From Macrostomum lignano (taxonomy: Eukaryota): a stretch of DNA of 64,000 bases. Positions 5,808 to 27,659 of the stretch are shown here, one piece after another. A program made the position numbers and the translations under genes. Location of the stretch: the NCBI GenBank assembly GCA_002269645.1, contig NIVC01000244.1, positions 142,484 to 206,483 on the forward strand. Reading direction: 5' to 3'. A model generated the notes under the pieces. It made no database searches. It was not told the DNA's origin and was given only the letters and a program-made list of their open reading frames with translations. Numbering within the stretch: position 1 is the first letter of the stretch; every line of letters begins with the position of its first letter.

Positions 5808-5811
<4 letters not shown>

Positions 5812-5867
<56 letters not shown>
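5812..5867. repeat. (TC)n microsatellite
   Basis: Perfect dinucleotide run. Confidence 0.95.
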
Positions 5868-5868
<1 letters not shown>

Positions 5869-6013
5869 GTCCGAACTGCAAAGCTTTTCTAGTCGCTTCA
5901 GGGCTCTCAGCCTTGTTTTTTTATTATCTTTATATTTAGAATGCTTTTTACTATTCAAAATTTACTCTCATCCACTGGATCCCTTCCGCTATTGATGTGT
6001 TTTATGTAAAGTC

Positions 6014-7299: not shown

Positions 7300-7966
7300 T
7301 TGACTGGGGGATTGGGGTCAGCGTGTCTGGAGTGACTACTGGGGGATTGGGGTCAGCGTGTCTGGAGTGACTACTGGGGGATTGGGGTCAGTTTGGGGTC
7401 AGCGTGTCTGGAGTGACTACTGGGAGATTGGGGTCAGCGTGTCTGGAGTGACTACTGGGGGATTGGGGTCAGCATGTCTGGAGTGACTACTGGGGGATTG
7501 GGGTCAGCATGTCTGGAGTGACTACTGGGGGATTGGGGTCAGTTTGGGTCAGCGTGTCTGGAGTGACTACTGGGGGATTGGGGTCAGCATGTCTGGAGTG
7601 ACTACTGGGGGATTGGGGTCAGTTTGGGTCAGCGTGTCTGGAGTGACTACTGGGGGATTGGGGTCAGTTTGGGGTCAGCGTGTCTGGAGTGACTACTGGG
7701 AGATTGGGGTCAGCGTGTCTGGAGTGACTACTGGGGGATTGGGGTCAGCATGTCTGGAGTGACTACTGGGGGATTGGGGTCAGTTTGGGTCAGCGTGTCT
7801 GGAGTGACTACTGGGGGATTGGGGTCAGCGTGTCTGGAGTGACTACTGGGGGATTGGGGTCAGCGTGTCTGGAGTGACTACTGGGGGATTTGGGGTCAGC
7901 GTGTCTGGAGTGACTACTGGGGGATTGGGGTCAGCGTGTCTGGAGTGACTGGGAGATTGGGGTCAG
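7300..7966. repeat. 35-bp G-rich minisatellite
   Basis: Unit tgactactgggggattggggtcagcgtgtctggag with occasional ttt(g)gggtcag insertions. Confidence 0.92.
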
Positions 7967-9271: not shown

Positions 9272-9279
9272 TATAAATA
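9272..9279 (+). promoter_or_regulatory. Candidate TATA box for gene B
   Basis: TATAAATA about 120 nt upstream of the ATG at 9396; motif only. Confidence 0.3.
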
Positions 9280-9395
9280 GGCGACCCCGCGAGTGCAAAA
9301 TTACAACAGCAGCAGTTGCCCCCCCTCTCGACCCAAAGCGATATTAAAAACCCAAAAGCGCTGCAACTGCTACAGTCGATCGCGCGGTCCCCTCA

Positions 9396-12300
9396 ATGCA
9401 GACCTCACTGTGGACTGGCTCAGCTGGTCGAGGAGGCGGCGGCGGCGGTAGCGGCGGTGGCAGCGGCCGGCGGCCCTCCTCTGTGGCTGGCTCTGTGTCG
9501 GCGGCAGCTGGAGGGGCGTCCGCCGGATCTTCATCTGCAGGCGGCGGCTTCCGGTTCGCGCACAGCGAGCACAGCAAGGAGCGCCACCGGGCCGAGAACC
9601 TGTCGGCTTCCCGGTCGCTGCTGGGTGGCTCCGGTGACATTGGCGGCTCTGTGGAGCTGCACCACCCAGCGTCCGCGGCGGAGGCGCACCTGGCCGCCGG
9701 CTGTCCGCGCCTGCGGGTCCTCCGGCTGGCCGAGCCGCCACCGCCGTCGTCAAATTCGGCAACGCCGACGCCGACAACTGGCGGCCGGACTGTGACGCCG
9801 CCGTCGTTTCTGCTGACTCTGCCAAACGACATGGTCGACGGAAACCTCGCCAATTACCACGGCGACGAGGACGACGACGAGCTGCGTCAGCTGCAGCAGC
9901 TCCGGCAGCAGCGGCAGCACATCGAGGCGTCGATCCGCTCGTTGGCCGCCTCTGTCGCTTCGTCAACGCAGCAACAGCTGGCGGCAACCGGCTGCGCCGA
10001 GTCTGCCGCTGCCGAGTTGCACGTGGACTCTAGGCTGACGCCGGACTCACCGGAAGAGCAGCGACGCGTCAGGCGAAAGAAGCTGCGCCAACGGGCCCTG
10101 GTTGGCGTCTACCTTACCGCCGTGCTGCTGGCAGTCCTGGCTGTGGTCTTCCTGGCCGCCAAGGGGGTCTTTTATACGGCGGGTGAGCTGCCAGTGTCAC
10201 TCTGCCTGTCTGCCAGTGTCACTCTGCCTGTTCATGTCACTGTCCGTCTGCCAGTGTGACTCCGCCTGTCTGCCATTGTCACTCTGTAGGTCGGGCTGCC
10301 AGTGTCACTCTAACTGTCTGCCAGTGTCACTCTGTAGGTCGGACTGCCGGTGTCACTCGGACTGTCTGCCAGTGTCACTCTGTCTGTTTGTCACTCTGTC
10401 TTTCTGCCAGCGTCACTCTAACTGTCTGCCAGTGTCACTCTGTATGTCGGGCTGTTAGTGTCACTCCGTTTGTATCTCTCGACTGTCGGTCTGCCAGTGT
10501 CACTCTGTCTGCCAGTGTCACTCTGTCTACCTGTGTCACTCTGTCTACCTGTGTCACTCTGTCTACCTGTGTCACTCTGTCTGCCAGTGTCACTCTGTCT
10601 GTCTGCCAGTCACTTATTCACCTGTGTCACTCTGTCTACCTGTGTCACTCTGTCTGCCAGTGTCACTCTGTCTGTCTGCCAGTCACTTATTCACCTGTGT
10701 CACTGTCTGTCTGCCAGTCACTTATTCACCTGTGTCACTGTCTGTGTGCCTGTCACTTATTCACCTGCGTCACTGTCTGTCTGCCAGTCACTTATTCACC
10801 TGTGTCACTGTCTGTCTGCCTGTCACTTATTCACCTGTGTCTAAGGTCTGTCTGTCTGTCACTTATTCACCTGTGTCAATGTCTGTCTGTCTGTCACTTA
10901 TTCACCTGTGTCACTGTCTGTCTGCCAGTCACTTATTCACCTGTGTCACTGTCTGTCTGCCTGTCACTTATTCACCTGTGTCTAAGGTCTGTCTGTCTGT
11001 CACTTATTCACCTGTGTCAATGTCTGTCTGTCTGTCACTTATTCACCTGTGTCACTGTCTGTCTGCCAGTCACTTATTCACCTGTGTCACTGTCTGTCTG
11101 CCAGTCACTTATTCACCTGTGTCTAAGGTCTGTCTGTCAGTCACTTATTCACCTGTGTCTAAGGTCTGTCTGTCAGTCACTTATTCACCTGTGTCTAAGG
11201 TCTGTCTGCCTGTCACTTATTCACCTGTGTCTAAGGTCTGTCTGTCAGTCACTTATTCACCTGTGTCTAAGGTCTGTCTGTCTGTCACTTATTCACCTGT
11301 GTCTAAGGTCTGTCTGTCAGTCACTTATTCACCTGTGTCTAAGGTCTGTCTGTCTACACCCTTGAAGCCCTCTAAATCCCTCGAAACTGAATTTAGTTTT
11401 CCAAGCGGATTTGCAGACGTTTTCGTGGCACCAGCTCTTTAATGTACATTCAGGAAAAATTATAACGCCTTGCAATATCATTTAAAGCTTAAGTAGCTCT
11501 TTACTTTGCCCAACTTATGTAGTGGCCTCATCCTACGAGCGTATATCTTAGCTGATGTGCTGCCACTAAAGAGATAATTTAGAATTTTGTATTGCAGCTG
11601 TCACCCCAGTTAGTTACTGCTAGTGAATTTCTCAGACAGGCTCAAACCGCCTAAAACGGATGAATTATTCATTTTTATCCCCCACTTCTCCAATTATTCG
11701 ACCCGCTCGTGATGTCGCATGATATTCAGGAAAAATTGAACTCGGGGAGCACGGGGCAAATAAAGCATATAATAAACCAGAACATCCTGTGCAGCAATAT
11801 GTAAGTTATTATTTACCTGTAAAAATTATTTTCCACAGGTGTCACCAATTAATAAATATATAGGGCCACAAGGTGAGGCAATCACGCTCGTAGAACTTGC
11901 AGTGGCTTACTATAAGTAGCGAGTTTGGAATTTGTGTACTAATACGAGCGTAAACAATTTGAAATAATTGTAGACTATAGCAAATTTTGTGGTTTAAATA
12001 ACTGGATTGAATTTGGTTTTGTTCTAATGCGTTTAACTGCTCACACATCTGCGGCGACGCATGCGCTTACCTCCCCATAATTTACAACCTGAGACTGGGT
12101 GAACCCTGAAAAATACCAGCTGATCCTGGGGTAAAAGTACAAAAATGCTAGCAGCTGATCCTGGGGTAAAAGTACAAAAATGCTAGCAGCTGATCCTGGG
12201 GTAAAAGTACGAGCGTACGAAAATGCTATTGTCCTTGAGTAAAAGTACAAAAGTGCTACCCTGGGGCAAAAGTACAAAGATGCTACCCTGACGCTGATCC

Positions 12301-12439
12301 TATCTAGACCCTGGACTAAAACTACATAAATCCAAAGCAGACTCAATGATAGAAATGTAAAGAATCGTACAACTGAAGGACAAACTCTTCAATCCCATTA
12401 ATTTCAGAAGTATCCGGCAAGGAGCACCATCACGACTGA
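9396..12439 (+). CDS. Orphan single-pass membrane protein (type II / near tail-anchored), ~307 aa
   Basis: Exons 9396-10182, 11730-11800, 11839-11872, 12408-12439(TGA); donors gtgagc/gtaagt/gtgagg; 924 nt in frame. Basic stretch RRVRRKKLRQR precedes TM ALVGVYLTAVLLAVLAVVFLAA; short tail ends EVSGKEHHHD*; AATAAA near 12826. The downstream small exons are less certain than exon 1. Confidence 0.6.
10185..11355. repeat. Intronic compound minisatellite, 18-bp units grading into 33-36-bp units
   Basis: Starts at the donor of gene B exon 1; ctgccagtgtcactctg units change into tctgtctgtcagtcacttattcacctgtgtctaagg. Confidence 0.93.
12118..12290. repeat. 35-bp repeat (cagctgatcctggggtaaaagtacaaaaatgctag) x3 plus decayed copies
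   Basis: Visible direct repeats in gene B intron 3. Confidence 0.8.
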
Positions 12440-12879
12440 CCGCCAAGAGTGCCCTTCAGTTATTCCGTGCTACAAGTTTACAGACAAGAAGCCGCAGGCA
12501 AAAACTACGACAAATTGATTCAAATTGCCATGCATTTTCATTTGACGCGTAAAGAAAAAAACTGCACATATCGGCCGCGTTTGAATTTTACTAACTAAGC
12601 ATTACCTATCCTTCACACTCAGCCATTTATCTTTTGCTTAATCCACAAAATTGAACTTTTCCGCCCAAATTAGGCAGACTTGGCTGCGAATGTAAAATTA
12701 TTAATGATTGAAGGGTGTCAAGGTGGATCTTGATTGATATTAGTTTGAATAAATTCTTGAATGCCACTGCTACAAATGCTAGTTTTGCATATACTTATGT
12801 TGGTTTTGTTGCTGATACAACACAAATAAAAGCCTTTTTGCCGTTCGTTTTTTACAAATAGTTTAATTTAAATGTCTGA

Positions 12880-13960
12880 AAATCGGGCCAGTAACTGAGG
12901 ATATGGGAGACTGGCCCGGCAACTGAGGGTCTGGGAGGCTGGCCCAATAACTGAGGATCTGGGAGGCTGGCCCAGCTGATCTGGGAGGCTGGCCCAGCTG
13001 ATCTGGGAGGCTGGCCCAGCTGATCTGGGAGGCTGGCCCAGCTGATCTGGGAGGATGGCCCAGCTGATCTGGGAGGCTGGCCCAGCAACTGATGATCTGG
13101 GAGGCTGGCCCAGCAACTGAGGATCTGGGAGGCTGGCCCAGCAACTGATGATCTGGGAGGCTGGCCCAGCAACTGAGGATCTGGGAGGCTGGCCCAGCAA
13201 TTAAGGATCCGGGAGGCTGGCCCAGCAACTGAGGATCTGGGAGGCTGGCCCAGCTGATCTGGGAGGATGGCCCAGCTGATCTGGGAGGCTGGCCCAGCTG
13301 ATCTGGGAGGCTGGCCCAGCTGATCTGGGAGGCTGGCCCAGCTGATCTGGGAGGATGGCCCAGCTGATCTGGGAGGCTGGCCCAGCAACTGATGATCTGG
13401 GAGGCTGGCCCAGCAACTGAGGATCTGGGAGGCTGGCCCAGCTGATCTGGGAGGCTGGCCCAGCAACTGATGATCTAGGAGGCTGGCCCAGCAACTGAGG
13501 ATCTGGGAGGCTGGCCCAGCAATTAAGGATCCGGGAGGCTGGCCCAGCAACTGAGGATCTGGGAGGCTGGCCCAGCTGATCTGGGAGGATGGCCCAGCTG
13601 ATCTGGGAGGCTGGCCCAGCTGATCTGGGAGGCTGGCCCAGCTGATCTGGGAGGCTGGCCCAGCTGATCTGGGAGGATGGCCCAGCTGATCTGGGAGGCT
13701 GGCCCAGCAACTGATGATCTGGGAGGCTGGCCCAGCAACTGAGGATCTGGGAGGCTGGCCCAGCTGATCTGGGAGGCTGGCCCAGCTGATCTGGGAGGCT
13801 GGCCCAGCAACTGATGATCTGGGAGGCTGGCCCAGCAACTGAGGATCTGGGAGGCTGGCCCAGCAATTAAGGATCCGGGAGGCTGGCCCAGCAACTGAGG
13901 ATCTGGGAGGCTGGCCCAGCAATTAAGGATTTGGGAGGCTGGCCCAGCAACTGGGGATCT
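12880..13960 (-). repeat. 28/20-bp minisatellite, inverted relative to 5274-5410
   Basis: Units gaggctggcccagcaactgaggatctgg and gaggctggcccagctgatctgg, between the converging 3' ends of genes B and C. Confidence 0.95.
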
Positions 13961-14298
13961 GGTAAGAAAAAAGGATGTATTTCTTCTTGGCAGAAAAACT
14001 GAAAAGAAAAAGACAAGCGAAAGAAATTCAAATGAAAATTAGTTCTGTACTTTAATGCTGCAACTGTACACAAAAATGCAGCTGTAGAGAAATAAATTAA
14101 CAGGAGTCATGAAAAGCATTTTGAAAGAAAATCTATGCACCAGCAAAGCAGTTCTCAGGCTGGCAGTGTCACTGAAAGACTAGAAAGTCTGTAGAAGTCT
14201 GCTGCTACTGCATGCAGTTAAGAATAATATTGTACATACAGGCCAATCGGCAACAGAAATGCGAGGCACCAAAAATGATATTGTTGATTAATATTTGC

Positions 14299-17200
14299 TC
14301 AACTGTCGGACAGGCGGACAATCCAAGCGGACAAGTCGGATCCGGCCACTTCAGACGGACTGTCGGCCGTGGCCGCGGAATCTGTAGCTGCCGCTAAGTC
14401 GGACTCGCCGATGTCCCAGAGCTTCTGAATCTGAGGATCAACCGGCTGCTTCTGGGCAGTTGCCAACAGGCTGAGCGCACCAGGTCTCTGGGAGACACCC
14501 GGCTGCTGCTGAGCTGCACCGCATCGGCCCGGAACGGCAGTCACAACAGCAGGGACAGCGGCTCCGCTTTGTGCCGCTCCGCCGCGATAAACTTTTAGCA
14601 CGGGAAACCCGGCCGCTCGATCGCTCCAACGGACTGAAGCAGCCGGCCACGGCGGCGGCTGCTGCTGCTGCTGCGGTTTCCTCGGCGGCCTTGGACGCTG
14701 CTGCAGCACCTGCTGCGTAGCTTCATCTTGGCGCCCATCCTGACGAAATCCCATAGCCATAAACTTTACTATACGCATCTCTGGCGGCGCGAACGGCACA
14801 ATGGGGTAGGCTGTCTTCATTCTACGCCGTTGGTCATCGGCGGCGGCCAAGTCAAAGCAGACGCCAATGTTGGCCACGCCTTCGGTGTCGTCGACGGCGG
14901 AGTCTCCGTCGGCCAGGTTGAAATCGACGCCGACATCCTCCGGTGGTGGTGACCGAGGCTGCGACGACCTCGACGGCTGCAAGCGTTGGGTGCCGAGACG
15001 GCTGTAGCCAACCCGGCGGCTGAGCCGGTCGGCTGGCCTGCGGGCAGGCGGTTTCAGTAGGGTCGGCGATGCTGTGGTTTGCGGCTCGTGTGTACATGTG
15101 TGCCTGGAGCATCCTACTACTTGGGGACGCTGGGAGAAAGCGGCCTCACAATTAGGGATCATGGCAGATAGCGGCCTCACAATTAGGGATCATGGCAGAT
15201 AGCGGCCTCACAATTAGGGATCATGGCAGATAGCGGCCTCACAATTAGGGATCATGGCAGATAGCGGCCTCACAATTAGGGATCATGGCAGATAGCGGCC
15301 TCACAATTAGGGATCATGGCAGATAGCGGCCTCACAATTAGGGATCATGGCAGATAGCGGCCTCACAATTGGGGATCATGGCAGATAGCGGCCTCACAAT
15401 TGGGGATCATGGCAGATAGCGGCCTCACAATTGGGGATCATGGCAGATAGCGGCCTCACAATTAGGGATCATGGGAGAAAGCGGCCTCTCAATTATGGAC
15501 ACTGGCAGATAGCAGCCTCACTACAATGGACACTGGCAGATAGCGGCCTCACTACAATGGACACTGGCAGATAGCGGCCTCACTACAATGGACACTGGCA
15601 GATAGCGGCCTCACTACAACGGACACTGGCAGATAGCGGCCTCACTACAATGGACACTGGCAGATAGCAGCCTCACTACAACGGACACTGGCAGATAGCG
15701 GCCTCACTACAACGGACACTGGCAGATAGCGGCCTCACTACAATGGACCCTGGCAGATAGCGGCCTCACTACAATGGACACTGGCAGATAGCGGCCTCAC
15801 TACAACGGACACTGGCAGATAGCGGCCTCACTACAACGGACACTGGCAGATAGCGGCCTCACTACAATGGACCCTGGCAGATAGCAGCCTCACTACAATG
15901 GACACTGGCAGATAGCGGCCTCACTACAACGGACACTGGCAGATAGCGGCCTCACTACAACGGACACTGGCAGATAGCGGCCTCACTACAATGGACCCTG
16001 GCAGATAGCAGCCTCACTACAATGGACACTGGCAGATAGCGGCCTCACTACAACGGACACTGGCAGATAGCGGCCTCACTACAATGGACACTGGCAGATA
16101 GCGGCCTCACTACAACGGACACTGGCAGATAGCGGCCTCACTACAACGGACACTGGCAGATAGCGGCCTCACTACAATGGACACTGGCAGATAGCGGCCT
16201 CACTACAATGGACACTGGCAGATAGCGGCCTCACTACAATGGACACTGGCAGATAGCGGCCTCACTACAATGGACACTGGCAGATAGCGGCCTCACTACA
16301 ATGGACCCTGGCAGATAGCGGCCTCACTACAATGGACCCTGGCAGATAGCGGCCTCACTACAATGGACACTGGCAGATAGCGGCCAAAAATCTCACCTGC
16401 CCACAGGATGGTTGTGCTCCAAACTGCTGTGAGCCGCCACGTACAGAGCCCGCTGAGCAGCGGCAAGGCGTAGCACCAGCTGAAATGGACAGTTCAGCCT
16501 GGCCCTGGGCAGCCTAGTAGGCCTGCGATGGCCCAGCCTAGGCGAATGATCGCACAGCACAAACACCTGGGCATATTTTAGATGAATTAGATCGGCCAAT
16601 CTACCTGTGAAATTTTGAAAGACAGTAAAAAAAATATTTTAACCGATGAAAATGGGGAATTTGGGGGATAGCGATGTCAAAACAATGGGTCACACTGGGA
16701 AGATAGCGGACTTGCTACAATAAGAAAGCTAGAAGATGGGAGGCCTCACAACAATGGCAAGGCTGCGGACACCCTGGCCTAACGCCTTCGACGAGATCGC
16801 TGAGGCAATTCTGCCCATTCCGCTGACTCCTGAGCACAATACAAGCCCTCTAATACTGTACGCAGGCACGGCACTCATACACGCTCACACAGGGTGTACA
16901 GCGAGAGATGAGAAGAGGAGAAGAGAGAAGGGGAGGAGAGAGAAGAGAAAAGAGAAGAGAAGAGAGAAGAGAAGAAAGAAGAGAAGAGGAGAAGAGAGAA
17001 GAGGAGAAGAGAGAAGAGAGAAGAGAAGAGAGAAGAGAGAAGAGGAGAAGAGAGAAGAGGAGAAGAGAGAAGAGGAGAAGAGAGAAGAGAGAAGAGGAAA
17101 AGAGAGAAGAGAGAAGAGAGAAGAGAGAAGAGAGAAGAGGAGAAGAGAGAAGAGGAGAAGAGAGAAGAGGAAAAGAGAGAAGAGAAGAGAGAAGAGGAGA

Positions 17201-20200
17201 AGAGAGAAGAGAGAAGAGAGAAGAGAGAAGAGAGAAGAGAGAAGAGGAGAAGAGAGAAGAGAGAAAAGAGAAGAGAGAAGAGGAAAAGAGAGAAGAGGAA
17301 AAGAGAGAAGAGGAGAAGAGAGAAGAGGAGAAGAGAGAAGAGAGAAGAGGAAAAGAGAAAAGAGAGAAGAGGAAAAGAGAGAAGAGGAAAAGAGAGAAGA
17401 GGAAAAGAGAGAAGAGGAAAAGAGAGAAGAGGAGAAGAGAGAAGAGGAGAAGAGAGAAGAGGAGAAGAGAGAAGAGGAGAAGAGAGAAGAGAAGAAGAGA
17501 GAAGAGGAGAAGAGAGAAGAGGAGAAGAGAGAAGAGGAGAAGAGAGAAGAGGAGAGAGAAGAGAGAAGAGAGAAGAGGAGAAGAGAGAAGAGGAGAAGAG
17601 AGAAGAGAGAAGAAGAGAGAAGAAGAGGAGAAGAGAGAAGAGGAGAAGAGAGAAGAGGAGAAGAGAGAAGAGAGAAGAGGAGAAGAGAGAAGAGAGAAGA
17701 GAGAAGAGGAGAAGAGAGAAGAGAGAAGAGGAGAAGAGAGAAGAGGAGAAGAGAGAAGAGAAGAGAGAAGAAGAGAAGAGAGAAGAGAGAAGAGAGAAGA
17801 GGAGAAGAGAGAAGAGGAGAAGAGAGAAGAGAGAAGAGGAGAAGAGAGAAGAGGAGAAGAGAGAAGAGAGAAGAGGAGAAGAGAGAAGAGAGAAGAGAGA
17901 AGAGGAGAAGAGAGAAGAGAGAAGAGAGAAGAGAGAAGAGAGAAGAGGAGAAGAGAGAAGAGGAGAAGAGAGAAGAGAGAAGAGGAAAAGAGAGAAGAGG
18001 AAAAGAGAGAAGAGGAGAAGAGAGAAGAGGAGAAGAGAGAAGAGAGAAGAGGAAAAGAGAGAAGAGAGAAGAGGAAAAGAGAGAAGAGAGAAGAGGAAAA
18101 GAGAGAAGAGGAAAAGAGAGAAGAGGAAAAGAGAGAAGAGGAAAAGAGAGAAGAGGAGAAGAGAGAAGAGGAGGAAGAGAGAAGAGGAGAAGAGAGAAAG
18201 AGAAGAGGAGAAGAGAGAAGAGAGAAGAGAAGAAGAGAGAAGAGGAAAGAGAGAAGAGGAGAAGAGAGAAGAGGAGAAGAGAGAAGAGAGAAGAGAGAAG
18301 AGAGAAGAGGAGAAGAGAGAAGAGAGAAGAGAGAAGAGAGAAGAGAGAAGAGAGAAGAGGAGAAGAGAGAAGAGGAGAAGAGAGAAGAGGAGAAGAGAGA
18401 AGAGAGAAGAGAGAAGAGAGAAGAGGAGAAGAGAGAAGAGGAGAAGAGAGAAGAGAGAAGAGGAGAAGAGAGAAGAGGAGAAGAGAGAAGAGAGAAGAGG
18501 AGAAGAGAGAAGAGAGAAGAGAGAAGAGAGAAGAGAGAAGAGGAGAAGAGAGAAGAGAGAAGAGAGAAGAGAGAAGAGAGAGAGAGAAGAGGAGAAGAGA
18601 GAAGAGAGAAGAGAGAAGAGAGAAGAGAGAAGAGAGAAGAGAGAAGAGAGAAGAGGAGAAGAGAGAAGAGAGAAGAGAGAAGAGAGAAGAGAGAGAGAAG
18701 AGAGAAGAGAGAAGAGGAGAAGAGAGAAGAGAGAAGAGAGAAGAGAGAAGAGAGAAGAGAGAGAGAGAGAAGAGGAGAAGAGAGAAGAGAGAAGAGAGAA
18801 GAGAGAAGAGAGAAGAGAGAAGAGAGAAGAGAGAAGAGGAGAAGAGAGAAGAGAGAAGAGAGAAGAGAAGAGAGAAGAGAGAAGAGAGAGAGAAGAGGAG
18901 AAGAGAGAAGAGAGAAGAGAGAAGAGAGAAGAGAGAAGAGAGAAGAGAGAAGAGAGAAGAGGAGAAGAGAGAAGAGAGAGAGAGAGAAGAGAGAAGAGAG
19001 AAGAGAGAAGAGGAGAAGAGAGAAGAGGAGAAGAGAGAAGAGAGAAGAGAGAAGAGAGAAGAGAGAAGAGAGAAGAGGAGAAGAGGAGAAGAGAGAAGAG
19101 GAGAAGAGAGAAGAGAGAAGAGAGAAGAGAGAAGAGAGAAGAGAGAAGAGAGAAGAGAGAAGAGAGAAGAGAGAAGAGAGAAGAGAGAAGAGAGAGAGAA
19201 GAGAGAAGAGGAGAAGAGAGAAGAGGAGAAGAGGAGAAGAGAGAAGAGGAGAAGAGAGAAGAGAGAAGAGAGAGAGAGAAGAGGAGAAGAGAGAAGAGAG
19301 AAGAGAGAAGAGAGAAGAGGAGAAGAGAGAAGAGAGAAGAGAGAAGAGAGAAGAGGAGAAGAGAGAAGAGAGAAGAGAGAAGAGAGAAGAGGAGAAGAGA
19401 GAAGAGAGAAGAGAGAAGAGAGAAGAGAGAAGAGAGAGAGAAGAGAGAAGAGAGAAGAGAGAAGAGAGAAGAGAGAAGAGAGAAGAGGAGAAGAGAGAAG
19501 AGAAGAGAGAAGAGAGAAGAGAGAAGAGAGAAGAGAGAAGAGAGAAGAGAGAAGAGAGAAGAGAGAAGAGAGAAGAGAAGAGAGAAGAGAGAAGAGAGAA
19601 GAGAGAAGAGAGAAGAGAGAAGAGAGAAGAGGAGAAGAGAGAAGAGAGAAGAGAGAAGAGAGAAGAGAGAGAGAAGAGAGAGAAGAGAGAAGAGAGAAGA
19701 GAGAAGAGAGAAGAGGAGAAGAGAGAAGAAGAGAAGAGAGAAGAGAGAAGAGGAGAAGAGAGAAGAGAGAAGAGAGAAGAGAGAAGAGAAGAGAGAAGAG
19801 GAGAAGAGAGAAGAAGAGAAGAGAGAAGAGAGAAGAGGAGAAGAGAGAAGAGGAGAAGAGAGAAGAGAGAAGAGGAGAAGAGAGAAGAGGAGAAGAGAGA
19901 AGAGAGAAGAGAGAAGAGAGAAGAGGAGAAGAGAGAAGAGGAGAAGAGAGAAGAGAGAAGAGAGAAGAGAGAAGAGAGAAGAGAGAAGAGAGAAGAGAGA
20001 AGAGAGAAGAGAGAAGAGAGAAGAGAGAAGAGGAGAAGAGAGAAGAGGAGAAGAGAGAAGAGGAGAAGAGAGAAGAGAGAAGAGAGAAGAGAGAAGAGAG
20101 AAGAGAGAAGAGAGAAGAGAGAAGAGAGAAGAGAGAAGAGGAGAAGAGAGAAGAGAGAAGAGAGAAGAGAGAAGAGAGAAGAGAGAAGAGAGAAGAGGAG

Positions 20201-23145
20201 AAGAGAGAAGAGAGAAGAGAGAAGAGAGAAGAGGAGAAGAGAGAAGAGAGAAGAGAGAAGAGAGAAGAGGAGAAGAGAGAAGAGAGAAGAGAGAAGAGAG
20301 AAGAGGAGAAGAGAGAAGAGAGAAGAGAGAAGAGAGAAGAGAAGAGAGAAGAGAAGAGAGAAGAGAGAAGAGAGAAGAGAGAAGAGAGAAGAGAGAAGAG
20401 GAGAAGAGAGAAGAGAAGAGGAGAAGAGAGAAGAGGAGAAGAGAGAAGAGAGAAGAGAGAAGAGGAGAAGAGAGAAGAGAAGAGAGAAGAGAGAAGAGAG
20501 AAGAGAGAAGAGAGAAGAGAGAAGAGAGAAGAGAAGAGAGAAGAGAGAAGAGGAGAAGAGAGAAGAGAGAAGAGAGAAGAGGAGAAGAGAGAAGAAGAGA
20601 AGAGAGAAGAGAGAAGAGAGAAGAGAGAGGAGAAGAGAAGAGAGAAGAGGAGAAGAGAGAAGAAGAGAAGAGAGAAGAGGAGAAGAGAGAAGAAGAGAAG
20701 AGAGAAGAGAGAAGAGGAGAAGAGAGAAGAGAGAAGAGGAGAAGAGAGAAGAGAGAGAGAGAAGAGAGAAGAGAGAAGAGAGAAGAGAGAAGAGAGAAGA
20801 GAGAAGAGAGAAGAGAGAAGAGAGAAGAGAGAAGAGAGAAGAGAGAAGAGAAGAGAGAAGAGAAGAGAGAAGAGGAGAAGAGAGAAGAGAGAAGAAGAAG
20901 AGAGAAGAGAGAGAGAGAGAGAGAGAAGAGAGAAGAGGAGACAGAAGAGAGCCGAGAAGAGACAAACCCGGGTTTGCCGACCCCTGAGTTAGACCATAAC
21001 GAGCTAAAACAGATACTGATAGTAACTGGCTATTGAATTCAATACCATCAACAGACAAGCCAGCAATTACCAGAGCCCGGATGCCTGGATAAGTAGCTCT
21101 CAATCGACACAGAGTTAGTCACTAGCAGGTTGGCCCCGGTGGCGGCCTCCAGGCCAGTTAGCAGAGCGCCGGCGCACTGCCAACAGCAGATCAGGCTGGC
21201 CTTGTTCGCCCCGGCAGCACCGCTGGCACCCGCGGCGACTCGTTCAGCCAATAAACGAGGCGCCTCGGCCCGCCAAGCGGCAAGGAGCGCGGTCGGATGG
21301 CCGGCGACAGCGGCCGGACAGCCCAAATGCCGGTCGGGGTCGATTTCGAACGGCGTCAGGCAGCGCCGGCGCCTGCTGCCGCTGCCGGCTGAGCGATGCG
21401 GCTGCCGCAGACGCTGATGCCTGATTTCGCCGCCACAATTCGAGCTGGAACGCCTGTTGCTACGGATTAGATTTTATTACATCATGCTTATAGAATCAAG
21501 GCTCCAGTGAACTCTAGCAGCTCCTCTCTCCACAATCACACCTAATGGTCTCGTTCTAGCAGCAAACAGCCCAGCTTCTCCTTTAGGCTTCCTTTCTCTA
21601 GAGCAGAGCCACAGAAGCAGTGCTTCATCCCCGCACACTGTAAATTATGGAAGCATTTGGCTTTTTTCCTTTGTCTTGTTCGCCTTCCATTCTCTCCTTT
21701 TGTTTTCTTTCACTTCCTTTCCGCTTACCTCGTCGTGGCTATGGGAACCATTGTGTCATTGACCACTGCCATGGTGAGTTGCATACAATAATAATAGTAA
21801 TATATAATATTATAGACGAAGTCCCACAAAGCACAGCTTATGAACTTGTTGCAATCCTGGGCCCAATAAAACATAAGACCTTTATGAGCACGATACTAAT
21901 TGTAAATAATTTAAGGCTCTTAGGTTCAAGATTCTATTCAGTAGTAATTAAGGAAAGAAAATAGCAGTTATTTTGAGCAAGGAAGCGACAAGAAAAAATC
22001 AATAATTGTTGTAACTGTTTTTTAGCGCAATATACCGGCTGTCTCAATAAAAAGGAGCCAAAATAGATGCATATTGTGACACAACCTCTCATCGGATAGG
22101 TTTTAGCTATCTGTGGATAGACAATACTTATAAATGATACAAAAATAAAGATTTAAGGCCAAACTACCCGATTAAAAAAGTAGGTTTTGTTATACATAAT
22201 ATATAGGTCTTACATACTAGGGTGGGAATTGAGACCAAAATCTCACCTGGCGCTGTTTGGTCGCACATCTGTCAACTGACTGGTATCCGCCTGTGGAGTG
22301 GTTGGCAAAGCCAACGATGAATCAGGCACAGTCAGACAGGCCATTGTAGACAGCGATTCAGCATCATCAGCAGCCTCAGCATCCGGCTGCTCATGAGCCG
22401 CTGGAGCGGTGACGTCAGCCCCAGCGGAGCCTGATTCCACCGCGAACGAAGCCTGGATGGAAGCTGTAGCAGCGGTCGGTGTCTCCGCTCTTCTCACAGT
22501 CGGCGTGGAGCTGCCGCTGCTGCTACCAAAGCACGGCTGCCGCTCCACCATCAGCGCCTCTATTGTAGATTGGTCCCGAGCTCGATCTCTCGGAGTCAGT
22601 CCGGCCGAATCAGTCTGGCCGGGATCGGCGCCGGCCTTCAACAGTAGCTGGATAGCGCCCGGCTGACAGCCGATAGCGGCCCAGTGCAACGGCGCCAGGC
22701 CCGTGGCGGGGCAGGCGGAGTCGGCCGAATAGCCGCTAGTCAGAAGGCGGCGCGCCGCTGGCAAGTCGCCGCACATACTGGCCTCCCGAAGCGCCATGGA
22801 GCCAAGAGCGCGCAGGCCGACAGCCGACAGGGCCGGGGAATCGTGTCCGGAGTGCGCCAGGCACAGCTGGACAATAACCAGCGCCTGGCGCTTCGGACAG
22901 GCTTTGGCGCGTAGGCCAAACTGGCAGTCTGGCGCCAGCGGACAGGCCAAGTTAAGGAAGCTGTAGCGCAAACTGGCCTCATCAATGCGCATGTAGGGCG
23001 CTTTGACTATGGAATTGTGGCAGCCGGCGCTGCGGGTGCCTGTGCTCTTCACTAGGCGGCTGCCAGTGGCGTCAGACAGGCAATCCGCCGCTGCCTGCAG
23101 TTCGCGATAGGTTGGAAACTCGCAGCCAACAAATATGTCGGCCAT
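14299..23145 (-). CDS. 764-aa protein: ZSWIM3-N/FAR1-like zinc domain + ankyrin repeats + second ZSWIM3-N/FAR1-like zinc domain + low-complexity tail
   Basis: Exons 23145-22247, 21453-21071, 16604-16397, 15103-14299; 2295 nt; phases 2,1,2 consistent; donors gtgag/gtaat/gtgag. Domain 1: MADIFVGCEFPTYREL...LRYSFLNLAC-x5-C-x23-H-x2-H. ANK: GDLPAARRLL...TGLAPLHWAAIGCQPGAIQLLLKAGADP...GLTP. Domain 2: ...LKYAQVFVLC-x20-CPFQLVLRL...LEHNH. Domain names come from motif recall, not a search; the 15103 acceptor is the weakest site. Confidence 0.8.
15135..16385. repeat. Two abutting 31-bp minisatellites in gene C intron 3
   Basis: gcggcctcacaattagggatcatggcagata (15135-~15480), then gcggcctcactacaatggacactggcagata (~15490-16385). 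Confidence 0.95.
16765..16905 (-). mobile_element. Fragment of a dispersed SINE-like family (copy 1 of 3)
   Basis: ctgcccattccgctgactcctgagcacaatacaag...ctcacacagggtgtacagcg matches 48160-48245 and 58460-58550. Confidence 0.7.
16906..20960. repeat. ~4-kb purine-only (A/G) repeat in gene C intron 2
   Basis: aagagag/aagagg(ag) motifs; by eye no C or T between ~16910 and ~20941. Confidence 0.97.
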
Positions 23146-24697
23146 TTGTGCTGGATGTGAAGGAAGACCTGCCTGCCGTCTTGGGCCGCTGAGCGATTCC
23201 CGTATTCTTGGTGTTACAGAGGCAGGGAATATGAGACAGTTGCCAAATATGTCTAGCTCAACTTTTTCTAGTCTGACACTCAACACATGTAGTCATCCAA
23301 TACTTCTATTGTTCTGCATCTCAGTGAGATTTTAATTTTTAGACTAGAATCTCTAAGATGGCTTATAAACTATAATTTTTAGCATATATAATGGATTTAA
23401 GTGTGACTTATATACATTATGTACAATACCACATAGATTAGTGTGGTCAATTTGGCTAATATATGCATTTGGAATAGATTAATTAATCTATAGTTTAGAA
23501 CACTATATGTAGAAAAAGTAGAAAGTAGAAAAAAATCTTTTTTTTTGGTTTACACTGATACACACAGACATTACCTTACACAAAGCTCTAAATTGTCAAT
23601 TAGACAAAGTTAAAAATAAAAATAATAGTTATTTTTGTATAATGTTTTATATAAACAATAAAGAACAAAAGTAAAATTTGGTGCATTTTTTGTTAATTTT
23701 TTAAATCCTTACTTTGTAAAAACATGGAAGTTAGTTTAGTGTTAAATAGTTATCAAATGTTAAGATTATATAATATATATGCATCTAGACAACTATTGTG
23801 ACTAGATATAGATAAAATGATAATGTATTTTTGGTACATCATATCAAAATATTAAATACATATACAAAAAGCCCAAAATAACTTTTTGTATAAACATATA
23901 TGCCAAAATTCTTGAATATACTCTAGAAAAAAAGCATACATGTCTTCTTCCTGACTATGGCATTTAAATTTATACAAAATGACTATAAAATAATATGGAT
24001 AGTATATATAAGTATACTTGTAGTGTTAAAAAAAATAGATTTTTTGTTGTCAAAACTTGTTTACAATAATAAAAACCTTTTCTTATAAAAAAGTTTTTAT
24101 TAGGTCTTATCCTATTGTATTTGTATTATAATAAATATAATACACTATAAATACATATAGACACAAATAAATACAAATACAGTAGGATAAGACCTAATAA
24201 AAACTATTTTCTCTATCTAAAAACATAGGTTAGGTAGCCCCTCCTATACATTAATATTCTATAGTAGGTAAGTAGCCTAGGCCTAGTAAGTAGGATGGCA
24301 ATATAAAGAATCATGTTTGGCTATTTTCTAGAAATACATTTAGCTAGGCCCAATCCAAATCTATTCAGCCTTGTTATATATATTATAAATATGTTTACTT
24401 TTGCTTTTGAAACAAACTAAGATCAAGAAAAATATTATATTAGGCTTTTCACAAAGATTGGTTCCAGAACCAGATTAATTCCAATTCCAAAACCAGAATT
24501 GGTAGGAAAATGAAAAGCATCAATTTTTTTATTTGTATTTAATTATAGTACTTCTCAAAAGTTAAAAAACATTTTTTTTATAAACTATGACCTACACTTT
24601 TGAGCTTTCAGTATTCTTTTTGAAATGTTTGAAATATTATTTTAAATTTGTCCTATTGGCTATTGTTTCGAAAGAAATATGACAAAGGATTGACCCT

Positions 24698-25060
24698 GAG
24701 CCTCTTCATATCGCCGGTTCCAAACTGGTTCGACGCTCTTCATATTGATGGTTTGAAAAACAGAATCAGTTCTGGAACATGGTTCTGGTTCTAGAATATG
24801 GTTCAAGAAATTTTCTTGAACCGTTGTCATGTTTACACTTTAACAGTAAAATATATTTGAAATCATCAATTTTTTTATTATTGTTATAAAATTATTCCTT
24901 TTTTGTCATATCCAAAAGGAAACAAAGTCAAAGAATGACAAAATTAAATTGTAAAGACTGTCAAACATAAAATGGGTTCAAAGCTCCTTATTTCACACTG
25001 GTTCTGGTTCTAGAACTCGAATTTATTCTGGTTCTAGAACCAATTGCCGTGAAGAGGCTC
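24698..25060. mobile_element. Candidate MITE, 11-bp TIR, 3-bp flanking duplication
   Basis: gagcctcttca ... tgaagaggctc flanked by cct on both sides; internal ggttctagaac motifs; similar termini (aggcttttca / tgaaaagcct) at ~24443, ~26602 and ~26952. Confidence 0.5.
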
Positions 25061-25621
25061 CCTATTGGAATATAATCACCAAAACCCATAGACACCATGC
25101 AGGGGTACTTCAAAGGGCTGCACCTGCACAGCATATCAGAATAAATGGCTTGGACACTTGTGCAAGACTGAAAAGAGTTAAGTTACTTATGTGCATTTGC
25201 AACTAGGTAAATGGCTAGAGTCAACTATAACTGTCTTATTAAGGCTAAATGCCTCATTATCTAATTAGTACTACCTCTATATTATTTTTGGGTAAGCATT
25301 TTTGTGACTTCTTGCTAGTCCAATACAATTTACAGTGGCCAGATTAGCTAGCAGTTTTGCATGTATGATTTCTAAAAAACATGATACAATTTAACAAAAT
25401 TTATTATAAATAATAATTGTACTATATTTACATTTTTAGTATTAGGCCCTCCCTAATAAATTAAGTATTAATAAATTTTTATATCTAAGCATTTATTGTA
25501 TGAGATAAAAAGAATGGCTAAACAATAACCCTATTTGGCTAATAATGTTGAATGTTAGGATTTTTAATTACTTTTTAAGATTTTAACATTTGCCTTTTCA
25601 TTTTGCAAATAGAACATAGGC

Positions 25622-25837
25622 CAGTAGTTTTTCAACTTGTGGGTTATGACCCCCAGTGGGGTTATATAACCATTTTTGAGGTTGCAACACTAAGAAATAA
25701 TAAACATTGTATGAGTATATCATACTTAATGATGCATTATATTGATTATAAAAGGGGTTACAAACATTAAAAAATGATGCAATGCAAGTTGCAAGTGAAT
25801 AAATTAAGGTCACCTGAAAAAAGGTTGAGAACTACTG
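25622..25837. mobile_element. hAT (Charlie-like) MITE
   Basis: TIRs cagtagtttttcaac / ggttgagaactactg; 8-bp TSD acataggc/gcataggc (7/8 match). Confidence 0.75.
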
Positions 25838-27659
25838 GCATAGGCCATGCACTCATGTGCGCATGCCCACATATACATGGGGATACCTATAACTAAGCAC
25901 ACTTACGCATGCACACATCTGCCTATACCTGCACCTACCAAATTTCTTAGGTGCACTGCCATGCCAGATGGTATCCAATTGGAATAATTGGATAAGAATT
26001 GCAATTGGAAGACTTATTTGAAGGTTCCTAGTCATTTTGTTATCTGCCATTTCATCATCTGGGTGTCTGGAATGTTCACCTCAACTTTGGTTACTTCATC
26101 ATCTTAGGCCTAATTAGCATACACTAGGCCTACCTGAAGAGAGTCATTTTTGTCTTCCACCAATAGTTCCAAATTCAAGTGAATTAATGTGGCAATCAAA
26201 CATATTTACTTGGAAATCCTAATGATCCCAGTCATTTTGTCATCTCGATTGATAAAACCTATCAATCGATCAGTTCTGTTTGCTGCAGCTTAATAGTAGT
26301 GTGGTTAATAAAAACAAAAAATGGTTTATACTAACTCGGATCTCACACAGATTAATTGGTTGATGAAGAAGTATCTAGAATAACTAAATATTTGGTCACT
26401 TTGTCAAATTAATTTTTCAAGATACTTTGCTTCTGGTCACTTCGTCATCCAATATGACAAAATGGAATATGACAATCTGACCAGGATTGAGTAAATTTCT
26501 CAAACTGAATTCCAGAATTGGATCACAATTTAGGAACTGATTCTAAAAATGGAATAGACAATATGAAAAGCTTTGAACCATGTCTGTTCTGGAATTGGAA
26601 TATGAAAAGCCTATTAAGTATTAGCCTAATCAATTATAAAATTTATCATAAAACATGTTTGCACTTTGCATGTCTTTTTTTAAACAAGCAATTATCAATT
26701 GATTATTTTTGCAATCACAAAATTAATATGAATCATCAAAACATCACCTAAATATCAAGCAACTAACAAACATGACTAGGCCTATCATCCTCCAATGCCT
26801 TGTTTCAAAGTTACACTTGTAATTTGACTAGGTAGGCCCCTAGGCCTAGCACACACATCCAATGATGTACAACCAAAGTGAAAAAGTCAGACGATGTATT
26901 AATTTGCACGATTCTGGTTCTGGAATCGGTAGGGCCTATTATGACGGTAATATGAAAAGCCTATATGACTATAGTATAGTATGACTATTGCACTATGTGA
27001 CTCTGCTCATTTGCTTTTTGCTTGTTTTGATATTGCTTTGATACACTATACACAGAATGATGTCCTATTACAGATTTATTTTGATTGTTAGGTCAATTTG
27101 AAAAGCAGAAATGCAGACTTAGCTAAATATTAAGAATGCTAACTTTTGTCGTTGGCCTACTTGCTGTCACAATGCTGCACGTGGATTAGGCCTACACTTA
27201 ATGATTGTTTCATAGAAAATGAAACCTCCGTTTGCAAGATTTTAGGAGGCTTCATTTCAAACAAATATTTTGTACATAATTTTTAGCGCTGTAGAGGAGG
27301 GTAAAATAAAATTTGATTGTTTTCTTAGCTTTAGTTTTAAAAAGCTATAAGGTCTAATATTTGTTGCAGAAATTTAGCGCAATAACTAATTAAATTCTTT
27401 GAACTTACTCTCGTGCGCGGCTTGAAAATTGATCGAAAATCAACCACAATCTGCAACACTAAAACAATTTGTTTGAATCGGTGACTTAGCGCGGCATTAT
27501 TCAAGAGTCCCATTTGCCTCTAGTTTTTAACTTTAGGACAAAAATGCAGAAAATATTTACTATATAGCCAGCAAATAAATGCAGGGATGTGTTGATAAGG
27601 AATAAATTAAATATCTTTTTCATGCACAGGTTACTGTGTAAATTGCAATGTCAATTCCA

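What the first reader, a model, noticed from the sequence alone, without database searches (positions are those of the whole stretch)
14299..23145. Apparently domesticated MULE-type zinc domains (x2) fused to ankyrin repeats, with no transposase core
Sequence: four exons splice in frame into a 764-aa ORF with two copies of a domain (C-x5-C-x23-H-x2-H and C-x20-C-x24-H-x-H) flanking 2-3 ankyrin repeats. Knowledge: this motif pattern matches the N-terminal WRKY/GCM1-fold DNA-binding domain of Mutator-like transposases, retained in ZSWIM3 and plant FAR1/FHY3. Sequence: there is no DDE catalytic domain, SWIM finger or TIR, and the gene has large introns, one of which splits domain 2. Inference: a host gene built from transposase DNA-binding modules plus a protein-interaction module, possibly a lineage-specific transcription factor or transposon repressor. 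I do not recall this architecture being described. It is invisible in the ORF track because domain 2 is split by a 4.5-kb intron.
Basis: partly seen in the sequence, partly recalled or inferred. Interest (0 to 1): 0.8.

Follow-up and report, generated by a model that had tools for sequence, protein, structure and literature searches.

The report
Flatworm ankyrin gene, possible transposase-derived zinc finger
This is a real, expressed, four-exon gene of the flatworm Macrostomum lignano, so far annotated only as "hypothetical protein"; it encodes ankyrin repeats plus one region that weakly resembles the DNA-binding zinc finger of Mutator-type transposases, while the claimed second copy of that finger has no support beyond a Cys/His spacing.

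Summary
The window is Macrostomum lignano contig NIVC01000244.1. A four-exon GT-AG gene lies on the minus strand at 14299-23145. It is already in GenBank as PAA87201.1 (BOX15_Mlig022608g1, "hypothetical protein, partial"), from a transcriptome-derived annotation.

Pfam confirms two ankyrin repeats plus a cap. Both Cys/His motifs are present. There is no transposase core, SWIM finger or TIR. Four about 98% identical copies keep the same neighbours, so this is a duplicated host gene, not a mobile element.

- Domain 2 has FAR1 as its only Pfam hit (E 0.14-0.22, 13 bits, below threshold). A genuine ZSWIM3 N-terminal domain scores the same against FAR1 (E 0.083, 14 bits).
- Domain 2 aligns in register with ZSWIM3_N on all four ligands (13/5000 shuffles).
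- Domain 1 gives no signal in any test.
- The two domains are not detectably similar by BLASTP.
- An exhaustive HMMER search with domain 2 found no homologue outside this gene.
- AlphaFold without an alignment failed (pLDDT 39).

Verdict: a lineage-specific ankyrin gene with one plausible MULE-type zinc finger. Modest interest, unproven.

The parts
14299..23211 (-). Whole annotated transcript span of gene BOX15_Mlig022608g1 (PAA87201.1). The CDS runs from the ATG at 23145 to the stop at 14301-14299.
   Evidence: locus L002 is identical to the window, and P0166 ends with the 744-aa spliced translation.
22247..23145 (-). Exon 1 (coding part, 899 nt, 63% GC). It encodes residues 1-299: putative domain 1, the ankyrin repeats, and the start of a low-complexity linker.
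   Evidence: Donor CAG|GTGAGA.
22831..23145 (-). Putative domain 1 (aa 1-105) with C68-x5-C74-x23-H98-x2-H101. Its identity is unproven.
   Evidence: Motif present. No Pfam, PDB or HMM signal. AlphaFold2 pLDDT 39.7.
22549..22803 (-). Ankyrin repeat region (aa 115-199): two full repeats plus a C-terminal capping half-repeat.
   Evidence: Pfam Ank_4 34.4 bits, Ank 31.7 bits and Ank_2 28.5 bits, all above their cut-offs.
21071..21459 (-). Exon 2 (389 nt, 67% GC). It holds a basic Arg-rich stretch (aa 302-333), an Ala-rich helical region, and the N-terminal part of putative domain 2 (aa 385-429, nt 21072-21206).
   Evidence: Acceptor 21459 is used in this copy, and 21453 in paralogues where the upstream AG is mutated.
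16605..21070 (-). Intron 2 (4466 nt), which splits putative domain 2. Most of it is a (GAGAAGA)n purine tract on the + strand at 16903-20951, which is a polypyrimidine run in the pre-mRNA.
   Evidence: The same intron is about 2.9 kb in the other three copies.
16397..16604 (-). Exon 3 (208 nt): the core of putative domain 2 (aa 431-498), with C447, a 20-residue Arg-rich insert, C468, Y484 and H493-N-H495. This is the FAR1/ZSWIM3_N-like part.
   Evidence: Pfam FAR1 E 0.14-0.22, in register. Control ZSWIM3_N against FAR1 gives E 0.083. Shuffle tests. 100% identical in all four copies.
15038..16396 (-). Intron 3 (1359 nt), almost entirely a 31-bp minisatellite (15125-16385, about 41 copies, two sub-variants).
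14299..15037 (-). Exon 4 (739 nt including the stop): the low-complexity C-terminal third (aa 499-744), with an acidic patch (aa 532-567) and an 'MGF' segment (aa 584-612). No family match.

Best explanation
This is an expressed, Macrostomum-restricted host gene present in about four recently duplicated copies. It encodes a 744-aa protein.

The protein has four parts: (i) an N-terminal Cys/His-containing region of unknown fold; (ii) two ankyrin repeats plus a cap; (iii) long disordered, partly basic linkers; (iv) one domain (aa about 385-498, split by a 4.5-kb intron) that is most likely a highly diverged insert-containing WRKY-GCM1 zinc finger. That is the type found at the N-terminus of Mutator-like transposases and retained in FAR1/FHY3 and ZSWIM3.

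Inferred mechanism: C447, C468, H493 and H495 chelate one zinc ion and hold a small beta-sheet that reads DNA. The Arg-rich 20-residue loop between the two cysteines adds backbone contacts. The ankyrin repeats recruit partner proteins. The protein would therefore act as a sequence-specific nuclear adaptor or transcription regulator.

Shown here: the gene model and its transcript-derived origin, the ankyrin repeats, the absence of any transposase part, the conserved synteny of the copies, and the borderline but in-register similarity of domain 2.

Inferred only: zinc binding, the fold, DNA binding, descent from a MULE, and any regulatory role.
For: Gene model and expression:
- P0166 (PAA87201.1) ends with the 744 residues of the spliced translation.
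- The GenBank models come from a genome-guided transcriptome (PMC5730564).

Host-gene status:
- Four copies have conserved neighbours.
- No TIRs.
- The neighbours in the window are ordinary genes: cathepsin, Ndc1, a SEA-domain gene.

Ankyrin repeats score above Pfam cut-offs.

Domain 2:
- Its only Pfam hit is FAR1, on profile positions 49-88, at 13 bits.
- This equals the 14.1-bit FAR1 cross-hit of a true ZSWIM3_N.
- Against a FAR1+ZSWIM3 HMM, 1/2000 and 2/3000 shuffles reach the real score.
- The semi-global alignment to ZSWIM3_N has Z=4.3 (13/5000) and pairs all four ligands, YAQVFVLC with YVQVKFVC, and NCPFQLVL with RCPAYLLL.
- With the ligands held fixed, 25-34 of 3000 shuffles reach the real score, the same as the ZSWIM3-versus-FRS5 control at 24/3000.

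Family features in Babu et al. 2006 (PMC1702500) that domain 2 matches:
- a basic insert of 20-70 residues between the cysteines;
- HxH;
- an aromatic residue in strand 4 (Y484 here, F in ZSWIM3);
- solo, transposase-less versions exist in animals and fungi.

Context: MULEs occur in Platyhelminthes (PMC6446971). Exon 3 is 100% identical in all four copies and no amino-acid change falls in aa 345-624.
Against: - No test reaches conventional significance. Pfam FAR1 is 15 bits below its gathering score.
- hhalign probability is about 1%.
- Exhaustive phmmer of domain 2 against 1.84 billion representatives returns only the gene's own paralogue. If it descends from a MULE, no intermediate is visible.
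- AlphaFold2 models are low confidence and the exon 2-3 construct came out all-helical. Foldseek on the domain 1 model gives no WRKY, GCM or FLYWCH match.
- The shuffle tests are partly anchored on a motif that was selected beforehand, and several comparisons were tried.
- dN/dS between copies is 0.32-0.45 on about 22 substitutions, too few to prove constraint.
- Three of the four copies carry frameshifting single-base indels. These could be assembly errors or real decay.
Confidence: 0.55

Rival explanations
1. Orphan ankyrin protein. The gene is a young or fast-evolving, lineage-specific ankyrin-repeat gene. Both Cys/His spacings are chance features of a Cys-rich (22 Cys), GC-rich coding sequence, or they belong to unrelated or novel metal sites. 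There is no transposase ancestry.
For: - No significant hit to any WRKY-GCM1 family member in Pfam, PDB sequences or hhalign.
- No homologue outside the species.
- Domain 1 is indistinguishable from shuffles.
- Domains 1 and 2 are not alignable by BLASTP.
- One such motif arises in about 5% of shuffles of this protein.
Against: - Two motifs occurred in 1/5000 shuffles.
- Among 24,736 Pfam families, the only one touching domain 2 is FAR1, in the correct register and at the same score as a true ZSWIM3_N cross-hit.
- Similarity to ZSWIM3_N persists when the four ligands are held fixed.
Confidence: 0.33
2. Both regions are WRKY-GCM1 fingers, so the protein is a two-finger plus ankyrin factor built from duplicated MULE DNA-binding modules.
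For: - Domain 1 has the ordered C..C..H..H ligands.
- H-x2-H spacing is reported for a subfamily of animal MULE transposases and for solo C. elegans proteins (PMC1702500).
- Its N-terminus GCEFPTYRELQ resembles ZSWIM3 GSCFKTYEDFK (hhalign's best local match, not significant).
- The C-terminal halves of domains 1 and 2 align in register: 24/3000 shuffles reach the real score, or 88/3000 with the ligands fixed.
- The low-confidence AlphaFold secondary structure is beta-alpha-beta...beta-beta.
Against: - No Pfam hit for seven different fragments of domain 1.
- HMM and pairwise scores against FAR1 and ZSWIM3 are no better than shuffles.
- It mixes features of different subfamilies: a short 5-residue Cys spacer, but HxxH and an N-terminal helix.
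- It has an aliphatic, not aromatic, residue at the strand-4 position.
- The model is unusable (pLDDT 39.7), and the Foldseek top hits are glyoxalase-fold at E 0.2.
Confidence: 0.3
3. It is still part of a mobile element, such as a non-autonomous MULE, a Pack-MULE-like capture, or a TE-derived multi-copy ORF, rather than a host gene.
For: - Four copies exist in the assembly.
- Three of them carry frameshifts.
- The locus is embedded in tandem repeats.
Against: - All copies are collinear over more than 15 kb, including introns and flanking genes, at 93-98% identity. This is what the duplicated DV1 karyotype and the redundant assembly predict (PMC5730564).
- No terminal inverted repeats.
- No transposase ORF anywhere nearby.
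- The GenBank gene set excludes transcripts overlapping repeat annotations.
Confidence: 0.03

Closest known systems
FAR1/FHY3 and FRS proteins of plants (Pfam FAR1, PF03101)
   Same: Domain 2 shares the ordered C...C...HNH ligands, a basic insert between the cysteines, an aromatic residue in the last strand, and a weak in-register Pfam match. Both are host genes thought to derive from MULE transposases.
   Different: FAR1 and FHY3 keep the MULE transposase core and the SWIM finger, and they have no ankyrin repeats. The match here is 15 bits below the family threshold. No orthology is detectable.
Vertebrate ZSWIM3/ZSWIM1 N-terminal domain (Pfam ZSWIM3_N, PF21599)
   Same: This is the best pairwise partner of domain 2 (Z=4.3), with all four ligands and both flanking strands in register. 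It is as distant from Pfam FAR1 as domain 2 is.
   Different: ZSWIM3 retains an RNase-H-like core and SWIM. PF21599 itself does not hit the flatworm protein at E<=10.
Solo insert-containing WRKY-GCM1 proteins (C. elegans solo versions; fungal Aft1/Rcs1, Aft2, Rbf1) described by Babu et al. 2006
   Same: They share the architecture principle: a MULE-type zinc finger without the transposase, recruited as a transcription factor. HxxH variants exist in animals.
   Different: None of the described architectures includes ankyrin repeats; the word does not occur in that paper. Membership of the flatworm domain is not established.
FLYWCH and classical WRKY fingers (short Cys spacer)
   Same: Domain 1 has a short C-x5-C spacer and about 23 residues to the histidines, as in these families.
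   Different: Domain 1 has no W two residues before the first Cys, no WRKYGQK motif, and HxxH instead of HxH. There is no Pfam hit.

Membership tests
Insert-containing WRKY-GCM1 zinc finger (FAR1 / ZSWIM3_N type, MULE transposase DNA-binding domain) | Four zinc ligands in the order Cys, Cys, His-x-His | tested here: met
   Domain 2: C447, C468, H493, H495. Domain 1 has C68, C74, H98-x2-H101. HxxH is reported only for one animal MULE subfamily.
Insert-containing WRKY-GCM1 zinc finger (FAR1 / ZSWIM3_N type, MULE transposase DNA-binding domain) | Insert of 20-70 mostly basic residues between the two cysteines (PMC1702500) | tested here: met
   Domain 2: 20 residues, DHSPRLGHRRPTRLPRARLN, with 6 Arg. 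Domain 1 does not meet this, having only 5 residues.
Insert-containing WRKY-GCM1 zinc finger (FAR1 / ZSWIM3_N type, MULE transposase DNA-binding domain) | Conserved Trp in the fourth strand | tested here: inconclusive
   Domain 2 has Tyr484 at the aligned position. ZSWIM3 has Phe and FAR1 has Trp. Domain 1 has Val/Ile.
Insert-containing WRKY-GCM1 zinc finger (FAR1 / ZSWIM3_N type, MULE transposase DNA-binding domain) | Profile match above the curated threshold (PF03101 28.1 bits; PF21599 27.8 bits) | tested here: not met
   Domain 2: FAR1 12.7-13.4 bits, E 0.14-0.22. No PF21599 hit. Domain 1: nothing. For calibration, a true ZSWIM3_N half gives 14.1 bits on FAR1.
Insert-containing WRKY-GCM1 zinc finger (FAR1 / ZSWIM3_N type, MULE transposase DNA-binding domain) | Four-stranded zinc-stabilised sheet (WRKY-GCM1 fold) | tested here: inconclusive
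   AlphaFold2 without an alignment gave pLDDT 39.7 and 39.0. Foldseek on such a model is meaningless and showed no WRKY-type hit.
Insert-containing WRKY-GCM1 zinc finger (FAR1 / ZSWIM3_N type, MULE transposase DNA-binding domain) | Zinc-dependent sequence-specific DNA binding | not testable with these tools
   Needs recombinant protein, metal analysis, and EMSA, SELEX or DAP-seq.
Autonomous or non-autonomous MULE transposon | DDE/RNase-H-like transposase core (and usually a SWIM finger) | tested here: not met
   No MULE, transposase or SWIM Pfam hit on the protein. No other long ORF in or beside the gene.
Autonomous or non-autonomous MULE transposon | Terminal inverted repeats, and dispersed copies with different flanks | tested here: not met
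   No flanking inverted repeats in 11500-26500. All four copies share flanking genes and introns.
Ankyrin repeat proteins | Tandem 33-residue repeats matching Pfam Ank models above threshold | tested here: met
   Ank_4 34.4/22.7, Ank 31.7/21.1 and Ank_2 28.5/27.3 bits on aa 115-199. The Ala-rich region of exon 2 that looks ankyrin-like by eye gives no hit.
FLYWCH / classical WRKY fingers (considered for domain 1) | [quoted passage not shown] | tested here: not met
   Domain 1 reads ...NLAC68..., has no WRKY motif, and has HSGH. No Pfam hit.

The most novel reading that the evidence does not exclude
A Macrostomum-specific regulator in which two Mutator-transposase-type WRKY-GCM1 zinc fingers have been exapted and joined to ankyrin repeats. 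This architecture is not among those catalogued for the superfamily. It would show de novo assembly of a transcription factor, or a transposon-targeting repressor, from transposase DNA-binding modules in a regenerating flatworm.
Probability: 0.25. Interest if true: 0.55.

Novelty: new variant of a known kind. Interest (0 to 1): 0.3.

Why it matters
If domain 2, and possibly domain 1, really is a MULE-type zinc finger, this gene would add an animal example of a known route. In that route transposase DNA-binding domains become host regulators, as in FAR1/FHY3 in plants, Aft1/2 in yeast and the solo versions in nematodes. Here the module would be combined with a protein-interaction module (ankyrin) in a way not previously catalogued.

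M. lignano is a transgenic, RNAi-amenable regeneration model, so the function could be tested directly.

The value is limited for three reasons. The homology is unproven. The gene has no detectable orthologue outside the species in current databases. Solo WRKY-GCM1 domestication is itself well known.

Tried and rejected
1. Word-indexed homologue search with the full protein. It found only two M. lignano entries plus generic ankyrin proteins.

2. The same tool with a chimeric query of domain 1, domain 2 and the C-terminus. It returned nothing, not even the paralogues. Hit lengths suggest the tool only returns proteins of similar length to the query, so this null result is uninformative.

3. Exhaustive phmmer with domain 2. 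It found only the paralogue P0002. Domain 1 could not be searched this way because the cap is one job.

4. PDB sequence searches of domain 1, domain 2 and the C-terminal region. There was nothing except one chance hit to a response regulator (E 0.64).

5. AlphaFold2 on domain 1 and on the exon 2-3 region without alignments. Both gave pLDDT about 39. Foldseek on the domain 1 model gave glyoxalase-fold hits at E 0.2 and was rejected as meaningless. I did not feed FAR1 sequences as a pseudo-alignment, because that would force the answer.

6. hhalign of single sequences against FAR1 and ZSWIM3 reference sets obtained. Probabilities were about 1%, but the ZSWIM3-versus-FAR1 positive control also reached only 4%, so the test has no power.

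7. An alternative reading that the C-terminal part of domain 1 (LCLAHSGHDS) is a degenerate N-terminal ankyrin cap. The Ank_2 alignment starts at residue 92, but fragments without the strong repeats give no Ank hit. Neither supported nor excluded.

8. UBA-like reading of the C-terminal 'FMAMGF' segment. No Pfam or PDB support.

9. dN/dS between the four copies. Values were 0.32-0.45 on about 22 substitutions. Non-synonymous changes look concentrated in the linker (aa 193-344), but the numbers are too small to be significant.

10. Metagenome scan for relatives. It found only an ankyrin match.
Full report
**What is in the sequence**

The region 14299-23145 carries a gene on the minus strand. Reading the minus-strand frames and splice signals independently, I obtained four exons with canonical GT-AG borders that join in frame. 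The exons are 58-67% GC and lie between AT-richer or repeat-filled introns.

A homologue search identified the organism as the flatworm Macrostomum lignano. A cluster look-up then showed that the window's own product is already deposited. It is PAA87201.1, locus tag BOX15_Mlig022608g1, "hypothetical protein, partial", 766 aa (P0166).

The locus fetched for that protein (NIVC01000244.1:146782-175694, assembly GCA_002269645.1) is base-for-base identical to window 4299-33211. The last 744 residues of PAA87201.1 equal the translation of exons 23145-22247, 21459-21071, 16604-16397 and 15037-14299. The extra 22 N-terminal residues are 5'-UTR read-through of a "partial" CDS. No in-frame ATG lies upstream of 23145.

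The GenBank annotation of this assembly was made from a genome-guided transcriptome (StringTie/TACO plus a de novo assembly). It was filtered to remove transcripts overlapping repeat annotations (PMC5730564). The three junctions therefore rest on RNA evidence, which I could not inspect directly.

- Acceptor 21453 is the one used in paralogous copies, where the upstream AG is mutated (gtag to gtaa).
- Acceptor 15103 adds 22 residues (66 nt) not present in any deposited model.

**Anatomy of the protein (744-aa numbering)**

| Residues | Content |
|---|---|
| 1-105 | Cys/His-containing region, C68-x5-C74-x23-H98-x2-H101 |
| 115-199 | Two ankyrin repeats plus a capping half-repeat |
| about 200-345 | Low-complexity Ser/Ala/Thr/Pro linker, ending in an Arg-rich stretch (302-333) |
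| about 345-385 | Ala-rich, probably helical segment; ankyrin-like by eye, no Pfam hit |
| about 385-498 | Putative domain 2, with C447-x20-C468-x24-H493-N-H495 |
| 499-744 | Low-complexity tail with an acidic patch and an "FMAMGF" segment; no family or PDB match |

All three main Pfam ankyrin models score above their gathering scores when the ankyrin fragment is scanned alone: Ank_4 34.4, Ank 31.7 and Ank_2 28.5 bits.

In domain 2 the 20-residue loop between the cysteines holds six arginines. The 4466-nt intron 2 interrupts the domain after Ser430.

The protein gives no MULE, DDE or SWIM hit. The surrounding 15 kb has no flanking inverted repeats. No other ORF nearby could encode a transposase.

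**Host gene or mobile element?**

The assembly holds four copies:
- the window;
- L001, at the start of the same contig in inverted orientation;
- L003, on NIVC01000242.1;
- L004, on NIVC01000243.1.

They are collinear with the window through exons, introns and intergenic DNA at 93-98% identity. They keep the same neighbours, a cathepsin-type protease upstream and a 266-aa gene downstream. This is what the duplicated karyotype of the sequenced DV1 line and the redundancy of this assembly predict. It is not what transposition would give. Other genes in the window are ordinary: papain-family protease, Ndc1 nucleoporin, a SEA-domain protein.

The three other copies carry one to seven single-base indels. 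This explains the truncated deposited proteins of 544, 402 and 295 aa. In L001 the indels are mostly one-base length changes in short C/G runs (five of the seven), confined to the first 1.7 kb of the contig, which suggests consensus errors. Real decay of redundant copies cannot be excluded.

Between copies dN/dS is 0.32-0.45 on about 22 substitutions. Exon 3 is identical in all four, and no amino-acid change falls between residues 345 and 624. This is compatible with constraint but too sparse to prove it.

**Is there a MULE-type zinc finger? Domain 2**

Of 24,736 Pfam families, the only one that touches domain 2 is FAR1 (PF03101). The match is at E 0.14-0.22 and 12.7-13.4 bits, aligned to profile positions 49-88 of 90. 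That is exactly the second Cys, the last two strands and the HNH. It is far below the 28.1-bit threshold and on its own is not evidence.

I calibrated it with a positive control. The C-terminal half of a genuine ZSWIM3 N-terminal domain, obtained and recognised by PF21599 at 1e-19, hits FAR1 at E 0.083 and 14.1 bits on positions 50-87. Domain 2 is therefore as FAR1-like as an accepted MULE-derived domain of another family.

Shuffle tests against reference sequences retrieved (plant FAR1/FRS fragments and mammalian ZSWIM3) gave these results:

| Test | Domain 2 (shuffles reaching the real score) | Control, ZSWIM3 vs FAR1/FRS5 |
|---|---|---|
| hmmsearch --max, FAR1+ZSWIM3 HMM | 1/2000 and 2/3000 | - |
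| hmmsearch --max, FAR1-only HMM | 48/2000 | 44/2000 |
| Semi-global BLOSUM62 vs ZSWIM3_N | 13/5000 (Z=4.3) | - |
| Ligands held fixed, vs ZSWIM3 | 25/3000 | 24/3000 |
| Ligands held fixed, vs an FRS5-like FAR1 domain | 34/3000 | 24/3000 |

The alignment to ZSWIM3_N pairs YAQVFVLC with YVQVKFVC, NCPFQLVL with RCPAYLLL, and HNH with HIH.

[quoted passage not shown] They also note transposase-less solo versions in animals and fungi (PMC1702500). MULEs are known in Platyhelminthes (PMC6446971).

Against this:
- hhalign gave about 1% probability, but its positive control also failed at 4%.
- Exhaustive phmmer against 1.84 billion representatives found only the gene's own paralogue.
- AlphaFold2 without an alignment gave pLDDT 39 and an all-helical guess.

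I put the probability that domain 2 is a diverged member of this superfamily at roughly 0.6.

**Domain 1**

Nothing beyond the Cys/His spacing supports domain 1.
- Seven different fragments give no Pfam hit at E<=10.
- The PDB sequence search is empty.
- HMM and pairwise scores against FAR1 and ZSWIM3 are no better than shuffles.
- BLASTP finds no alignment between domains 1 and 2.

The only positive signs are weak. There is an in-register alignment of the C-terminal halves of the two domains: 24/3000 shuffles reach the real score, or 88/3000 with ligands fixed. There is a local resemblance of GCEFPTYRELQ to ZSWIM3 GSCFKTYEDFK (not significant). The HxxH spacing has a precedent in one animal MULE subfamily.

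Domain 1 also mixes traits of different subfamilies: a short Cys spacer together with an N-terminal helix and HxxH. The AlphaFold model is unusable (pLDDT 39.7), and its Foldseek matches are non-significant glyoxalase-fold proteins.

"Two copies of a domain" is therefore not established.

**Most likely function**

The best-supported reading is a lineage-restricted nuclear protein. One zinc-stabilised beta-sheet module (domain 2) would bind DNA and the ankyrin repeats would bind partner proteins, connected by long disordered linkers. It would be a transcription-factor-like adaptor of possible transposase ancestry.

Everything after "ankyrin repeats" in that reading is inference.

The main rival, at about one third, is that this is simply an orphan ankyrin gene whose Cys/His motifs are coincidental or form an unrelated metal site. 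That it is still a transposon is effectively excluded.

**Novelty and score**

The gene is already annotated, but only as hypothetical, with no domain call except a faint ankyrin hit. Solo MULE-type fingers recruited as host factors are a known phenomenon. Fusion to ankyrin repeats is not among the architectures catalogued in the reference survey (one search shows no mention of ankyrin).

If real, this is a new variant of a known kind. Given the borderline evidence and the lack of any orthologue, I score interest at 0.3.

The decisive work is comparative (orthologues from other Macrostomum species feeding HHpred and AlphaFold) and biochemical (zinc content and DNA binding of the isolated domains).

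Noticed in passing
window 16903-20951 (+ strand), inside intron 2: A 4-kb uninterrupted purine-only tract, (GAGAAGA)n, with GC and AT skew of 1.0. It makes a 4-kb polypyrimidine run in the pre-mRNA. It is about 1.5 kb longer here than in the three paralogous copies, where intron 2 is about 2.9 kb.
   Followed up: partly
window 15125-16385 (intron 3) and 12893-13962 (just downstream of the gene): Two large minisatellites. One has a 31-bp unit in about 41 copies with two sub-variants and fills intron 3. The other has a 22/28-bp unit in about 40 copies, 340 bp past the stop codon. Copy numbers differ between the paralogous loci.
   Followed up: partly
NIVC01000244.1 positions 1-19084 (L001) versus 146782-175694 (window): Two copies of the whole locus lie on the same 552-kb contig in inverted orientation, about 130 kb apart. 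This is either a real inverted segmental duplication or a mis-join of homeologous haplotypes at a contig end.
   Followed up: no
L001 1188-1730; L003 exon 2; L004 exons 1 and 4: Three of the four copies carry single-base frameshifting indels. In L001 five of the seven are one-base length changes in short C/G runs. These indels truncate the deposited proteins PAA87197.1, PAA87224.1 and PAA87221.1. It is undecided whether they are assembly errors or decay of redundant copies.
   Followed up: partly
window 21453-21461: Tandem acceptors 6 nt apart (tccgtAG|CAACAG|G). This copy uses the upstream one, which adds Ser-Asn. The paralogues have gtaa instead of gtag and use the downstream one.
   Followed up: yes
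window 23146-23165: A pyrimidine-rich stretch ending in AG lies 5 nt upstream of the start codon (cttccttcacatccAG|cacaaATG). It could be a spliced-leader trans-splice acceptor, which is common in this species (PMC5730564).
   Followed up: no
window 29128-29916 (-), 34791-36299 (-), 60653-61786 (-): Neighbouring ordinary genes: a papain-family cysteine protease (Peptidase_C1, 6e-72), the C-terminal part of the Ndc1 nucleoporin, and a SEA-domain protein.
   Followed up: partly
tool behaviour: The word-indexed homologue search appears to return only proteins of roughly the query's length. A 285-aa chimeric query missed 544- and 655-aa paralogues that contain identical segments. Negative results from that tool are weaker than they look.
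   Followed up: partly
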